Below, piece after piece: positions 46,844 through 50,228 of a DNA stretch of 64,000 nt (within the stretch, counting starts at the first letter, position 1; each line of letters opens with the position of its first letter). The stretch spans positions 9,734,001 through 9,798,000 of the forward strand of contig OZ260661.1 in NCBI GenBank assembly GCA_965285935.1. Direction: 5' to 3'. Origin of the DNA: Ophelia neglecta (taxonomy: Eukaryota). Under the pieces are notes generated by a model, which was given only the letters and a program-made list of their open reading frames with translations, was not told where the DNA came from and did no database searches. A program made the translations under genes and the position numbers.

Positions 46844-47576
46844 TTATTATACATCATTGAAAAATCCCGCCCTGTGATTGGCTGAATGGTGTTGGTTAGA
46901 ATCGCCTAGTGTCCCAGCCGTACGCTAGTTTCACGAACTAGTCCCGGGGACTAGTTCGTAAAACTAGCGCATGGCTAGCAGTGGCGGCCTCGTGTGGCTA
47001 ATTTATGCACTTCACTAACGAAACCACCATTTTTATTGTCGTATTAGTATTTTCCAAACAAACTACAGTCAATTGTTTCAGGTTTATAAAAAGTAAGATA
47101 ATAAATAAGAATATACATTATTCAAATATATTTGCACGTTTAAAATTGGACTATGTTGCCGAAAACGCGGGTTCAATAAATACGAAACCATGCGCATAGC
47201 TCTACTTCGAACGTAAAACAAACGCGGCGGGATCCCGGAACATCAATAACAGCTGAATAATCTGATAATGGCAAGGTTTGCAGCATGGTGTACATTTTTA
47301 TTGCAGTAATGGAACAATAGGTAAAACAATCTATAGATCTATCTAGAGCATAGAACCAATAGAGATGTTAAATGTGCAAAGATTTTTCAATGATGTATAA
47401 TAAAACAACTATGAAACTTGCCCCTCGGGGACTAGTCCAAACAATTTGCCCCTCGTGAGGTGACCAGTGAACTATTTCCCTCGACCTTCGGTCTCGGGAA
47501 ATAGTTCACTGGTCACCTCCCTCGGGGCAAATAGTTTGGACTAGTCCCCTCGGAGAAGTTTCTTAGTTGTATAATA
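46844..47576. mobile_element. Non-autonomous element with asymmetric inverted repeats and a long terminal hairpin (Crypton- or Helentron-like architecture)
   Basis: 23-bp IR ttattatacatcattgaaaaatc (46844-46866) / gatttttcaatgatgtataataa (47381-47403); internal palindrome ~46917-46975; ~82-bp-arm hairpin 47405-47570; no ORF. Confidence 0.7.
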
Positions 47577-48131: not shown

Positions 48132-48560
48132 GGCATACTGGAAAACCTGATACGAAATACGAAGGAAATACGAGATACACAGATACGAAAAAGTAACGCC
48201 AGTATATTATAATGATTGGTCCATAACGTGGTAGCGCCTTAGGCGTCCCACACTACTTATGTCGTCCTTTCCGGCGCATCCATGTCTCACTCGATTTCCG
48301 TGTTATTGGGTACATAAAAATATACTTCACTTCCGGCTATATCAATGTGAGTCTTGGTGTTGTGATTCCTACTCTAATTTGCGTAAGATAGAGTTGGGTT
48401 ATGACAGGGTTAGGGGTAGGGTTAAGCTAGCAACCTAACTAAATCATAACTTACTTAACCCTTCACCCTAACCCTAACCTAGTCCATATGGCTACGTTTT
48501 ACACACATCTCGTATCTGCGTCTCGTATCTGGTATTTCGTATCAGCTTTTCCAGTATGCC
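48132..48560. mobile_element. Mutator-like MITE, copy 3 (longer variant, no TSD)
   Basis: Same TIRs as copies 1 and 2 plus ~190 bp extra interior (~48194-48384); flanks do not match each other. Confidence 0.85.
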
Positions 48561-49506: not shown

Positions 49507-49937
49507 AATTTTGCCAAGGGTAATAATGTTTTCTAGGCGTTAAACCCTCGGGGGATCATTACTAGATGGTCAATTTTGCACGCCTTTTCTCGAATTATCT
49601 ACAGAATTTACCATATAAACCAGATCTTCTCAGGCATTGGTTATATTTACCTTTTTATTGTTAATTTTTGTTAATTTACACAGGTAAATTTCCTTGTGGC
49701 CAAAAAAGCTTCTTATAAACAGTAATTCTGTACAGATGATGAAACCAAAAATAGGTCAAACTATCTGGAAGAGTTAATATACTCAAATAAATCACTAGAC
49801 TAAATATAATTTGAAAGTGGCATGGAAATAGTAGCAGCATAATGTATTTTATGTGTATTATGTGTATGTGTTTGCTGTCCTGAACCGTTTCGGAGCAGCT
49901 TGAAAGCTTTTAAAAGCATATATACAGTGGGTACGGG

Positions 49938-50228
49938 TTGCTGTTGTTGTTTGGGGTGTTTATGTGACTTTCAACACTTATATGGTCAGATTGCCACGGT
50001 GCCTACTTGTGACAGTGAGCCCAATGCTCTCTTTATAGTGCTGCCTCACTGGAGTACCTGCCAGACAGACACCAGACAGGGAACCCCACCCAGTCACATT
50101 ATACTGACACATGGCCTACCAGTTCTGATACTACTTTTGAAATGCCGAGTGCCAGGCAGTGGAGATATCAGTACCCTATTGTTATGTATTGGGTTTTTGA
50201 CCCGCCTGAGATTTGAACCCCTCGACCA
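49938..50228 (-). mobile_element. Second SINE family (Meta-SINE-like), 5' truncated
   Basis: B-box-like GGTTCAAATC on the minus strand near 50210, core cccagtcacattatactgacac...aatgccgagtgccaggca, (CAA)n-like tail; A-box missing. Confidence 0.7.

What the first reader, a model, noticed from the sequence alone, without database searches (positions are those of the whole stretch)
47405..47570. Long terminal hairpin with single-stranded-DNA features: cGAAg triloop and three tandem GA/GA mismatches
Seen: ~82-bp arms are complementary except for scattered differences and three recurring spots where both arms read CTCG on the plus strand. On the minus strand these become 5'-CGAG-3' opposite 5'-CGAG-3', and the loop is GACC-GAA-GGTC. 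Established: cGNAg triloops and tandem sheared G.A pairs in Py-GA-Pu context strongly stabilise DNA hairpins. Inference: repeating the same mismatch three times is unlikely to be decay. It suggests selection on a folded minus-strand ssDNA terminus of an element with an ssDNA intermediate (Crypton/Helentron-like or unclassified).
Basis: partly seen in the sequence, partly recalled or inferred. Interest (0 to 1): 0.75.

Follow-up and report, generated by a model that had tools for sequence, protein, structure and literature searches.

The report
Crypton transposon's strand-specific terminal hairpin
The long hairpin is the end-piece of a young jumping gene moved by a tyrosine recombinase (a Crypton), and its paired G-A mismatches recur in many related elements, which suggests these transposons work through a folded single DNA strand.

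Summary
Window 47405-47570 is a 166-nt imperfect palindrome with three CTCG/CTCG spots. On the minus strand these are tandem G·A pairs, and the loop is C(GAA)G.

It is not decay. The three spots are in the family consensus (34 sequences).

The hairpin ends a 730-bp gene-less copy (46844-47573) of a Crypton DNA transposon. Full-length 2.4-kb copies elsewhere in the genome encode a 480-aa tyrosine recombinase with an intact catalytic set.

The far-end 23-nt repeat recurs, inverted, just inside the hairpin. In a head-to-tail dimer the joined ends extend the hairpin to about 216 nt.

Three other Crypton families of this genome (23-37% protein identity) and 17 hairpin clusters on metagenome contigs show the same design with unrelated stem letters. 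They share a long terminal hairpin and tandem G·A pairs, 89 of 94 in pyrimidine-GA-purine context. The G·A pairs always lie on the strand whose 5' end is the element's tip. A GNA triloop is often present.

Use as folded single-stranded DNA by the recombinase, as with integron attC sites, is inferred and not shown.

Papers describe animal Cryptons as lacking terminal repeats. Earlier notes of this scan reached the same reading on other copies.

The parts
46844..47573 (+). Gene-less (internally deleted) copy of a Crypton-type transposon. It equals the first 443 bp and last 289 bp of the 2.4-kb full-length element.
   Evidence: Searches give the boundaries in 29 other loci. One search aligns it to L067 233-675 and 2367-2650.
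46844..46866 (+). Far-end 23-nt repeat TTATTATACATCATTGAAAAATC, beginning with the constant TTA.
   Evidence: (I3), and (75 forward + 75 reverse exact copies in the genome).
46872..46885 (+). CCAAT-box-like motif (..TGATTGGCTGA..), a possible promoter element for the recombinase gene. L069 has a similar motif at the same place.
   Evidence: Sequence read. The NF-Y consensus is recalled and was not tested.
46916..46976 (.). Second, smaller palindrome (30-nt arms, 90% complementary) about 70 nt from the far end.
   Evidence: The L072 family has a counterpart 50 nt from its far end.
47268..47286 (+). Remnant of the recombinase ORF start (ATG plus 16 nt), up to the internal deletion breakpoint.
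   Evidence: compare L067 657 onward.
47381..47403 (+). Sub-terminal inverted copy of the far-end repeat, lying just inside the hairpin.
   Evidence: (I3, 93% over 29 nt).
47405..47570 (-). 166-nt terminal hairpin. The minus strand carries the G·A pairs and the GAA loop.
47487..47489 (-). Triloop: TTC on plus, GAA on minus, closed by C-G.
47481..47482 (-). Tandem mismatch site 1 (partner 47494-47495), 4 bp below the loop. T·C/C·T on plus; G·A/A·G in CGAG/CGAG on minus.
47453..47454 (-). Tandem mismatch site 2 (partner 47522-47523), 28 nt from site 1.
47425..47426 (-). Tandem mismatch site 3 (partner 47550-47551), 28 nt from site 2.
47456..47456 (+). Private substitution of this copy (T; family consensus G) that adds one extra mismatch.
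47566..47573 (+). Last 8 nt of the element, GTTGTATA. The final TGTATA repeats the end of the sub-terminal repeat.
47574..47576 (+). Flanking trinucleotide ATA (family pattern NTA), host-derived and not part of the element.
   Evidence: 21 ATA, 4 CTA, 2 TTA, 1 ATG, 1 TTG among 29 distinct ends. Empty sites.

Best explanation
SHOWN. The hairpin is the terminal cis-element of a young CryptonA-type DNA transposon that encodes only a tyrosine recombinase. The window holds a 730-bp internally deleted copy. Full-length 2.4-kb copies encode a 480-aa recombinase in which Arg, His-x-x-Arg, His and Tyr are conserved.

The layout is: constant TTA plus a 23-nt far-end repeat; body; an inverted copy of that repeat; the 166-nt hairpin; 4 nt; end. 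Insertion is next to a host NTA with no target duplication. When two ends are joined (head-to-tail dimers exist), the far-end repeat, the hairpin and the inner repeat fold into one hairpin of about 216 nt, with the joint inside one arm.

The CTCG/CTCG spots are tandem G·A pairs in pyrimidine-GA-purine context, and the first lies 4 bp under a C(GNA)G triloop. This pattern, though not the stem letters, recurs in three other Crypton families of this genome and in 17 metagenome hairpin clusters. It is always on the strand whose 5' end is at the element's tip.

INFERRED. The structure works as folded single-stranded DNA of that one strand, either exposed at replication or as the favoured arm of an extruded cruciform. 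The same positions stabilise the G·A strand and weaken the complementary strand, where they are pyrimidine-pyrimidine 2x2 loops, so they select the strand. Folding also brings the recombinase-binding inner repeat next to the cleavage point at the tip. I think the recombinase then exchanges that single strand with a target NTA and replication finishes the job, as integron integrases do with attC sites.
For: Identity:
- Copies and boundaries.
- Full-length copy and ORF.
- Pfam DUF3504 and Phage_integrase in all four proteins, with R169, H291, R294, H317 and Y326 invariant.
- The consensus keeps the three sites.

Joint-completing hairpin: the tandem dimer in L018 folds at -99.2 kcal/mol with the helix running through the joint.

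Same layout in other families:
- L069 (37% protein identity) has a far-end repeat, its inner inverted copy, and a hairpin with 68-nt arms.
- The L071 and L072 families start exactly at their hairpins.
- In L072 the sequence after the hairpin is an inverted copy of the far end.

Strand-specific structure:
- On the four consensus hairpins the non-Watson-Crick oppositions are 19 G·A, 8 G·T, 3 T·T, 1 A·A, and no C·A or C·T.
- DNA folding energy favours the G·A strand in 4 of 4 (-77.4/-74.8, -76.4/-73.3, -31.7/-27.1, -45.1/-40.0).
- Arms are unrelated in sequence (z -1.2 to 2.8).

Other organisms:
- 18 of 40 metagenome loci with at least 1 kb downstream of the gene carry a downstream hairpin with tandem T·C on the sense strand.
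- 15 of 15 downstream clusters have G·A on the antisense strand, and 2 of 3 upstream hairpins have it on the sense strand.
- 89 of 94 arm contexts are CGAG, CGAA, TGAG or TGAA. The first site is 1-6 bp from the loop in 17 of 21.

Chemistry: CGAG opposite CGAG forms sheared tandem G:A 'CGAG blocks' in DNA hairpins (PMC10085684, passages read). d(GNA) loops are very stable with a C-G closing pair (PMC3201870 and PMC13037366, abstract starts in the search listing).

Precedent: integron integrases recombine only the folded bottom strand of attC and need replicative resolution (PMC2727003 and PMC4792948, abstract starts in the listing).
Against: - No direct evidence of single-stranded DNA, circles or activity. 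The only runs were contigs of the same organism, which cannot show rare forms, and no RNA run was found.
- The 8:0 excess of G·T over C·A on the G·A strand in this genome is not repeated in the metagenome hairpins. Summing the table by hand gives 19 G·T against 16 C·A for the 15 downstream cluster representatives, and 6 against 6 for the two upstream ones.
- GNA triloops closed by C-G occur in 13 of 21 hairpins, not in all.
- Not every relative has the hairpin. None was found in L070 (3.8 kb) or in 2 kb sampled around C5:44095776. 22 of 40 metagenome loci with enough flank lack one with tandem mismatches.
- One upstream hairpin (L215, at a contig edge) has the opposite polarity.
- Within each family the copies are nearly identical, so within-family covariation has no power.
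- Classical tyrosine recombinases act on duplex sites with 6-8 bp staggered cuts.
Confidence: 0.6

Rival explanations
1. Duplex reading. The palindrome acts as double-stranded DNA, and the CGAG/CTCG spots are short directional protein-binding motifs (accessory sites for the recombinase or a host factor). They look like mismatches only because a directional motif sits in both arms.
For: CGAG is the commonest context, 50 of 94 arms. The window family has six same-strand copies spaced exactly 28 nt apart, and spacings elsewhere cluster at 19-21 and 26-30 nt, which looks like a protein-binding register.
Against: What is conserved is the geometry pyrimidine-GA-purine opposite itself (CGAA 18, TGAG 17, TGAA 4), not one word. 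A 4-nt degenerate word is too short for sequence-specific binding. This reading does not explain the C(GNA)G loops or the fixed polarity relative to the tip. It also does not explain the absence of C·A and C·T on that strand in this genome's four families.
Confidence: 0.15
2. Second-strand origin. The element leaves as a single-stranded circle, and the hairpin is a strand-specific priming site for synthesis of the complementary strand, like the single-strand origins of rolling-circle plasmids. It would not be the recombination site itself.
For: The same strand asymmetry and fixed orientation apply. Head-to-tail dimers exist. That single-strand origins are long, orientation-dependent imperfect palindromes is recalled knowledge.
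Against: The hairpin always sits at the very tip and next to the inner copy of the end repeat. This fits a role in end recognition better than a role that could be served anywhere in the element. No polymerase or Rep is encoded.
Confidence: 0.12
3. RNA hairpin. The structure is selected in a transcript (a regulatory antisense RNA or a small-RNA precursor), and the G·A and G·U pairs reflect RNA folding.
For: With RNA parameters the G·A strand is also the more stable in 4 of 4 (-135.6/-126.0, -125.2/-111.9, -64.6/-50.4, -83.1/-70.6). There are sub-threshold Rfam hits to generic miRNA-precursor models (50.8 bits against a gathering score of 110).
Against: No Rfam family reaches its threshold. The favoured strand is antisense to the gene in some families and sense in others, but it always starts at the element's tip. 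Such an RNA would have to begin outside the element. C(GNA)G triloops and pyrimidine-GA-purine tandems are hallmarks of DNA mini-hairpins (PMC3201870 and PMC13037366 in the listing; PMC10085684 passages). An 80-bp RNA hairpin would invite silencing of the element. No RNA run was available to test this.
Confidence: 0.08
4. Helentron-type (HLE2) non-autonomous element moved in trans by a Rep/helicase, with the recombinase gene as cargo.
For: The layout matches what is described for HLE2: short terminal inverted repeats with a stem-loop after the right repeat, and a 'reverse' variant with the stem-loop at the 5' end (PMC11417382, passages read). The genome holds many Helitron-like Rep genes, 86 matches, with open frames up to 2238 aa.
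Against: No Rep is inside the elements. The largest copies are 2.4 kb, and the 100 listed occurrences of the end motif pair at no more than 2.24 kb. The two Rep elements fetched share nothing with it. Insertion is next to NTA and not between T and T; the empty site of L029 is ACTA|CTAG. Four diverged families and many metagenome relatives each keep an intact recombinase beside their own hairpin, as expected if the recombinase moves them.
Confidence: 0.04
5. An unrelated palindromic miniature element that happened to insert at the end of this transposon, so the direct TGTATAATA on both sides would be a target duplication and the mismatches would be decay.
For: The hairpin is flanked by direct copies of TGTATA(ATA) (D1).
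Against: The same position and polarity are seen in families with 23-37% protein identity and in many metagenome relatives, each with a different hairpin sequence. L072 has no flanking duplication. The mismatches are in the consensus and are of one chemical kind.
Confidence: 0.02

Closest known systems
CryptonA elements (animal Cryptons; Kojima & Jurka 2011, PMC3212892)
   Same: A single ORF for a tyrosine recombinase related to DUF3504, with no other enzyme. There are abundant gene-less deletion derivatives, no classical target duplication, and short similar trinucleotides (TTA / NTA) at the two ends.
   Different: That paper states that no terminal repeats, direct or inverted, were found in animal Cryptons (passage read). 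[quoted passage not shown] Here there are an end repeat with an inner inverted copy, a 107-166-nt terminal hairpin, and a strand-specific G·A pattern.
Integron attC sites recombined by IntI (and, as recalled, CTX phage attP by XerCD)
   Same: A tyrosine recombinase and an imperfect palindrome whose sequence is not conserved but whose unpaired features are. One strand is used, and the asymmetry serves strand choice (PMC2727003 and PMC4792948, abstract starts in the listing).
   Different: attC sites are bacterial and 60-140 nt long, and they use extrahelical bases and an unpaired central spacer, not tandem G·A pairs. Single-strand use is demonstrated for attC and only inferred here. No homology is claimed.
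Helentron / HLE2 termini (PMC11417382)
   Same: An end repeat, its inverted copy, then a stem-loop at the very end. Both gene orientations relative to the stem-loop exist.
   Different: HLE2 elements encode Rep/helicase (HUH), insert between T and T, and have 12-16-nt repeats and short stem-loops. Here the enzyme is a tyrosine recombinase, insertion is next to NTA, the repeats are 17-33 nt and the hairpins 107-184 nt.
DIRS-like retrotransposons with an internal complementary region
   Same: A tyrosine recombinase, and an internal stretch complementary to the joined ends (PMC13465315, passage read, describes the inverted terminal repeats and internal complementary region).
   Different: DIRS elements carry reverse transcriptase and replicate through RNA. 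These elements have no RT.
DNA mini-hairpins d(GCGNAGC) and 'CGAG blocks'
   Same: The apical module C(GNA)G and 5'-CGAG-3' opposite 5'-CGAG-3' match the motifs shown by NMR to form sheared G:A pairs in stable DNA hairpins (PMC10085684 passages; PMC13037366 and PMC3201870 in the listing).
   Different: Those are short oligonucleotide motifs or a human promoter repeat. Here they are spaced along an 80-bp stem at a transposon tip.
IS200/IS605 sub-terminal hairpins (recalled, no call)
   Same: Strand-specific imperfect hairpins at the ends, insertion next to a short fixed word, and no target duplication.
   Different: These are bacterial, use an HUH single-strand transposase, and have much shorter hairpins.

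Membership tests
Crypton (tyrosine-recombinase DNA transposon), CryptonA group | Encodes a tyrosine recombinase with the R-H-R-Y catalytic set | tested here: met
   The L068 ORF of 480 aa is intact. R169, H291, R294, H317 and Y326 are invariant in four family proteins. Phage_integrase scores 27.9 bits against a cut-off of 27.1. The window copy itself has lost the gene.
Crypton (tyrosine-recombinase DNA transposon), CryptonA group | Recombinase related to DUF3504 (the animal Crypton lineage) | tested here: met
   PF12012 matches at E 2.3e-10, 4e-8, 3.3e-27 and 5.9e-27, all over the cut-off. The link between DUF3504 and CryptonA comes from PMC3212892 (passages read).
Crypton (tyrosine-recombinase DNA transposon), CryptonA group | No reverse transcriptase, DDE transposase or Rep in the element | tested here: met
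   There is a single long ORF in the 2.4-kb element, and Pfam finds only recombinase-related domains.
Crypton (tyrosine-recombinase DNA transposon), CryptonA group | No target duplication; short similar words at the two ends as recombination substrates | tested here: met
   TTA is constant at the far end and NTA is present at the hairpin end in 27 of 29 distinct ends. Empty sites agree. The word is 3 nt here, against the 4-6 nt described for fungal Cryptons.
Crypton (tyrosine-recombinase DNA transposon), CryptonA group | Mobility through a circular intermediate made by the recombinase | not testable with these tools
   Only head-to-tail dimers and contigs were available.
Helentron / HLE2 non-autonomous element | Autonomous partner encoding Rep/helicase with the same termini | tested here: not met
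   Listed occurrences of the end motif pair at no more than 2.24 kb (50 of 150 not listed). There was no match in the 30 Rep loci or the two fetched Rep elements.
Helentron / HLE2 non-autonomous element | Insertion between T and T | tested here: not met
   The base before the element is A 17, T 8, G 2, C 1, and the base after GTTGTATA is A in 22 of 29. The L029 empty site is ACTA|CTAG.
Helentron / HLE2 non-autonomous element | Short terminal inverted repeats with a stem-loop after the right repeat | tested here: met
   Searches show the layout. This is a resemblance of layout only.
Integron attC-type folded recombination site | Recombined as a folded single strand by a tyrosine recombinase | not testable with these tools
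   Only indirect support: strand asymmetry and fixed polarity.
Integron attC-type folded recombination site | R''/L'' and L'/R' boxes with extrahelical bases | not tested
   No such boxes were looked for. The unpaired features here are tandem G·A pairs. This is an analogy, not membership.
Known RNA family (Rfam) | Score at or above the family's gathering score | tested here: not met
   The best match is MIR6217 at 50.8 bits against 110.

The most novel reading that the evidence does not exclude
A large clade of animal Cryptons transposes by strand-specific recombination of a folded single DNA strand. The terminal hairpin, with its tandem sheared G·A pairs and GNA triloop, is a eukaryotic counterpart of the integron attC site. 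The end repeat and its inner copy form the recombinase's duplex core site by intra-strand pairing. One strand is exchanged next to a target NTA, and replication resolves the product. This would be the first eukaryotic tyrosine recombinase shown to use folded ssDNA. It would also explain why Helentrons and these Cryptons arrived at the same end layout.
Probability: 0.35. Interest if true: 0.9.

Novelty: new variant of a known kind. Interest (0 to 1): 0.78.

Why it matters
How Cryptons move is essentially unknown. The circle model dates from 2003, and no cis-acting site has been defined for animal Cryptons, which the literature describes as lacking terminal repeats.

This finding gives a conserved and experimentally tractable end structure: a short recombinase gene, a 730-bp natural mini-element, and defined G·A sites that can be mutated or moved to the other strand.

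If the folded-strand reading holds, it extends single-strand site-specific recombination from bacteria to animals. It would also offer a compact, strand-selective recombination system. Tyrosine recombinases of this lineage gave rise to animal genes such as ZMYM2-4, QRICH1 and KCTD1, so knowing what DNA form the ancestral enzyme bound may bear on those too.

Tried and rejected
Helentron reading. This was my first guess, at about 65%. I dropped it after the 2.4-kb copies showed a tyrosine-recombinase ORF and the Rep loci shared nothing with the element.

Nested-MITE reading. Dropped after the same layout appeared in other families.

Far end of the L071 family. A candidate inverted copy at L071 1943-1961 proved to lie inside the coding region, so it is a chance match. 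The far end was left undetermined.

Within-family covariation. There is no power, because the copies are nearly identical.

Control palindromes in the window. Only two other short-loop palindromes exist, one of them the element's own, so no local control set could be made.

Families without a hairpin. None was seen in L070 or in the pieces of C5:44095776.

Reads. Four runs were found, all contigs. Three are from one sample of the same organism, and one is a plankton metagenome with a single 151-nt piece. Depths fit about 3 full-length copies and some 35-70 ends. The 1688-nt deletion joint was seen. No back-joint and no RNA run were found.

Literature. Four searches on Cryptons found no description of a terminal hairpin in Cryptons. 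Repbase consensus sequences could not be checked; they may contain such hairpins without comment.

Not run: the search for homologous proteins, the search of protein representatives, structure prediction, fold search, the protein-atlas search, build_rna_model.
Full report
1. The observation.

Window 47405-47570 is a 166-nt imperfect palindrome: left arm 47405-47486, loop TTC at 47487-47489, right arm 47490-47570. The repeat finder reports 60-nt inner arms at 90% complementarity with 3 nt between them. Both arms read CTCG on the plus strand at three places: 47424-27 with 47549-52, 47452-55 with 47521-24, and 47480-83 with 47493-96. The plus-strand fold therefore has tandem T·C/C·T mismatches. 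Folded as DNA, the minus strand gives -74.3 kcal/mol and the plus strand -70.0. Both are about 17 standard deviations below shuffles, and 0 of 200 shuffles fold as well.

2. What it belongs to.

A search of the window's own 762-Mb genome returned 40 forward places at 96-100% identity. Comparing the window with 29 of these loci shows that the repeated unit is window 46844-47573, with internal-deletion variants. The exact 23-nt end motif occurs 75 times forward and 75 times reverse; the reversed-pattern control gives 0 and 0. Most pairs lie 170-860 bp apart, but three lie about 2.24 kb apart.

Two of these long copies were fetched. The window copy equals the first 443 bp and the last 289 bp of the 2.4-kb element. 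The long element has one gene. In L068 it is an intact 480-aa ORF; in L067 the frame is broken near the C-terminal catalytic region. Pfam finds DUF3504, Phage_integrase and a QRICH1-type domain.

A protein search of the genome found 3 full-length copies of this family, two with an open 486-aa frame, and diverged relatives. An alignment with three of them shows invariant R169, H291, R294, H317 and Y326, which is the tyrosine-recombinase catalytic set. DUF3504 is the domesticated form of the animal Crypton recombinase (PMC3212892, passages read). The element is therefore a CryptonA-type transposon, and the window holds a gene-less derivative.

My first reading was a Helentron derivative, at about 65%. 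I abandoned it. The genome has 86 Helitron-like Rep matches, but the 30 Rep loci and two fetched Rep elements share nothing with this family.

3. Ends and insertion.

The element begins with TTA-TTATACATC... and ends ...GTTGTATA. Among 29 distinct 3' ends, the next three bases are ATA 21, CTA 4, TTA 2, ATG 1 and TTG 1 (L003 and L025 were dropped as duplicates of L002 and L018). Two insertions into tandem repeats give empty sites. The host sequence ACTA|CTAG (L029) and the host sequence ACGGTA-TTA-GGACACT (L022) both fit insertion of TTA...GTTGTATA just 5' of a host NTA, with no duplication. A diverged paralogous empty site in the window itself, near 49987, agrees.

Head-to-tail dimers exist in L018, which is the same place as L025. 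Their joint is GTTGTATA-TTA-TTATACATC.

4. Layout.

The 23 nt at the far end (46844-46866) recur as a perfect inverted copy at 47381-47403, just inside the hairpin. In the dimer, the inner copy, the hairpin and the next copy's far-end repeat fold as one structure of -99.2 kcal/mol, with the helix running through the joint. A second, 61-nt palindrome lies 72 nt from the far end at 46916-46976.

5. Are the mismatches selected?

Within the family this cannot be judged. In 34 sequences the hairpin is almost invariant. The consensus keeps all three sites and the loop, and differs from the window at one base, 47456. This does rule out private decay. The test therefore has to come from other families.

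Four regions around diverged recombinase genes were fetched.

- L069 (37% protein identity) has the same layout. Its far-end repeat is TTATCATATACCTAACA, the inverted copy is at 2644-2660, and the hairpin at 2665-2803 has 68-nt arms, a TTC loop, and a tandem T·C/C·T 4 bp from the loop. Four more copies confirm the ends: TTA at the far end, and GTA, GTA, GTA, TTC after the hairpin end.
- L071 and L072 (23% and 28% identity) have a hairpin of about 107 nt roughly 0.8-1 kb upstream of the gene. Here the G·A pairs are on the sense strand.

Genome searches show that copies of both families begin exactly at the outer foot of that hairpin. The three bases outside it are TA-N in 31 of 36 copies (L071 family) and 21 of 21 copies (L072 family). 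The L072 family ends ...CGTATACTAA, and the sequence just inside its hairpin, TTAGTATAAACGTTT, is the inverted copy of that end. So the repeat-plus-inner-copy layout holds there too, with the gene simply turned round.

In all four families the G·A strand is the one whose 5' end is at the tip.

On the four consensus hairpins the non-Watson-Crick oppositions on that strand are 19 G·A, 8 G·T, 3 T·T and 1 A·A, with no C·A and no C·T. The loops are C(GAA)G three times and C(GCA)G once. The DNA folding energy favours that strand in 4 of 4. The arms are not alike in sequence; alignment scores lie -1.2 to 2.8 standard deviations from shuffles.

6. Other organisms.

Earlier notes of this scan (read) said that relatives elsewhere share the design, so I tested this independently. 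A scan of metagenome contigs with the four-protein alignment gave 432 relatives, of which 80 loci were kept.

A self-complement search found 58 palindromic alignments of 50 nt or more in 41 loci, and 47 distinct palindromes from these were analysed. 24 downstream hairpins have at least one tandem T·C/C·T on the sense strand, against 1 with tandem G·A. Among upstream hairpins, 2 have tandem G·A on the sense strand and 1 (L215, at a contig edge) has the opposite.

The 26 long downstream hairpins taken forward fall into 17 clusters at 80% identity. 15 of these have tandem mismatches, and all 15 have G·A on the antisense strand. Several loci also show the far-end repeat with its inverted copy abutting the hairpin: L140 (33 nt), L159 (34 nt), L139 (23 nt) and L149 (19 nt).

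I then took 21 hairpin families together: 4 from this genome, the 15 downstream clusters and 2 upstream ones.

- Of 94 arm contexts of tandem G·A sites, 50 are CGAG, 18 CGAA, 17 TGAG and 4 TGAA. That makes 89 of 94 pyrimidine-GA-purine.
- The site nearest the loop is 1-6 bp from it in 17 of 21, and exactly 4 bp in 10.
- Spacings cluster at 19-21 and 26-30 nt.
- C-G-closed GNA triloops occur in 13 of 21.

Results against my reading:

- Only 18 of 40 loci with at least 1 kb downstream carry such a hairpin.
- L070 and the sampled pieces of another family in this genome show none.
- The excess of G·T over C·A on the G·A strand, 8:0 in this genome, is not seen in the single metagenome contigs. A hand sum of the table gives 19 against 16 for the downstream representatives and 6 against 6 for the two upstream ones.

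7. Chemistry.

5'-CGAG-3' opposite 5'-CGAG-3' forms two sheared G:A pairs with cross-strand stacking in DNA hairpins. This is the 'CGAG block', in line with earlier work on pyrimidine-GA-purine tandems (PMC10085684, passages read). d(GNA) loops give very stable DNA hairpins when closed by C-G (PMC3201870 and PMC13037366, abstract starts seen in the search listing).

The same positions on the complementary strand are pyrimidine-pyrimidine 2x2 loops. One set of letters therefore stabilises one strand's hairpin and weakens the other's.

8. Mechanism.

Shown: the identity of the element, its layout, the joint-completing fold, the conserved strand-specific G·A pattern and polarity, and the insertion site.

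Inferred: that the hairpin acts as folded single-stranded DNA of one strand, that the G·A sites serve strand choice and recognition, and that the recombinase exchanges that strand next to a target NTA with replicative resolution. Integron integrases act this way on the bottom strand of attC (PMC2727003 and PMC4792948, abstract starts in the listing).

Three facts fit this better than a duplex circle model. The inner copy of the end repeat can pair with the far end on the same strand. The junctions are precise and asymmetric: TTA is constant at one end and NTA is host-derived at the other, with no sign of a heteroduplex overlap among the 29 ends. The layout is shared with Helentrons, which use single-strand chemistry (PMC11417382, passages read).

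None of this proves the model. I put the whole statement at 0.6, the attC-like mechanism alone at about 0.35, and the identity of the element near certainty.

9. Rivals.

The rivals are a duplex protein-binding register, a strand-specific origin for second-strand synthesis, an RNA hairpin, a Helentron derivative and a nested miniature element. They are set out with their evidence in the Rival explanations section. Rfam gives only sub-threshold matches to generic miRNA-precursor models.

Public runs were of no help on strand or expression. All four were contigs. Their depths fit about 3 full-length copies and some 35-70 ends, and the 1688-nt deletion joint was seen, but no back-joint was listed.

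10. Novelty.

Kojima & Jurka (PMC3212892, passages read) state that no terminal repeats, direct or inverted, were found in animal Cryptons, including in 50 copies of one family. [quoted passage not shown] Four full-text searches on Cryptons found no description of such a hairpin.

Supplementary files and Repbase entries could not be seen and may bear on this.

Earlier follow-ups of this scan, on other copies of the same family, reached the same reading. They are AI notes and not independent evidence. I formed my reading before seeing them and tested their cross-organism claim myself.

I file the finding as a new variant of a known kind.

Noticed in passing
window 46872-46885; L069 about 880-895: Both group-1 families carry a CCAAT-box-like word (..TGATTGG..) 28-40 nt from the far end, upstream of the recombinase gene. 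It may be the element's promoter. The consensus is recalled and was not tested.
   Followed up: no
window 48132-48560: 29-nt inverted repeats (97% complementary) lie 371 nt apart. Telomere-like CCCTAA repeats lie inside, around 48395-48486. This is another small element or fold-back that was not examined.
   Followed up: no
window 49936-50183: This stretch is a diverged paralogue of the DNA flanking the L013 copy. It serves as an approximate empty site for that insertion.
   Followed up: partly
G000 contig C19 (e.g. L034-L048, L061-L063): About 15 Helitron-like Rep genes with intact open frames of 2214-2238 aa recur every 27-30 kb along one 530-kb contig. Downstream of the ORF (L062 6330-6560) lies an array of short CCTGAC...GTCAGG mini-palindromes.
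   Followed up: partly
L128 (G000:C1:19104456-19104736): In one copy of the L069 family the left arm of the hairpin is interrupted right before a GTA by the 5' end (TTATCATATACC...) of another copy. This looks like an insertion into an NTA site inside a hairpin, followed by a deletion.
   Followed up: partly
L071-family copies L089-L092, L105-L107: This sub-family shares only the hairpin and about 10 further nt with the gene-bearing element and then has different internal sequence. These are gene-less derivatives that keep the hairpin.
   Followed up: no
all 21 hairpin families: Tandem G·A sites are spaced regularly: 28 and 28 nt in the window family, and mostly 19-21 or 26-30 nt elsewhere. 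This hints at a protein-binding register along the stem.
   Followed up: partly
L215 1-184: This metagenome locus has a 184-nt hairpin 1.35 kb upstream of the gene with the opposite polarity (T·C on the sense strand). It lies at the contig edge and may be the end of a neighbouring copy.
   Followed up: no
run X4 on L068 2138-2288: A marine plankton metagenome run holds a 151-nt contig of this element with 2 differences, at depth 3.
   Followed up: no
L002 vs L003; L018 vs L025; L069 vs L134/L130: Some loci have identical flanks on different contigs or nearby places, through assembly duplicates or segmental duplications. Raw copy counts therefore slightly overstate independent insertions.
   Followed up: partly
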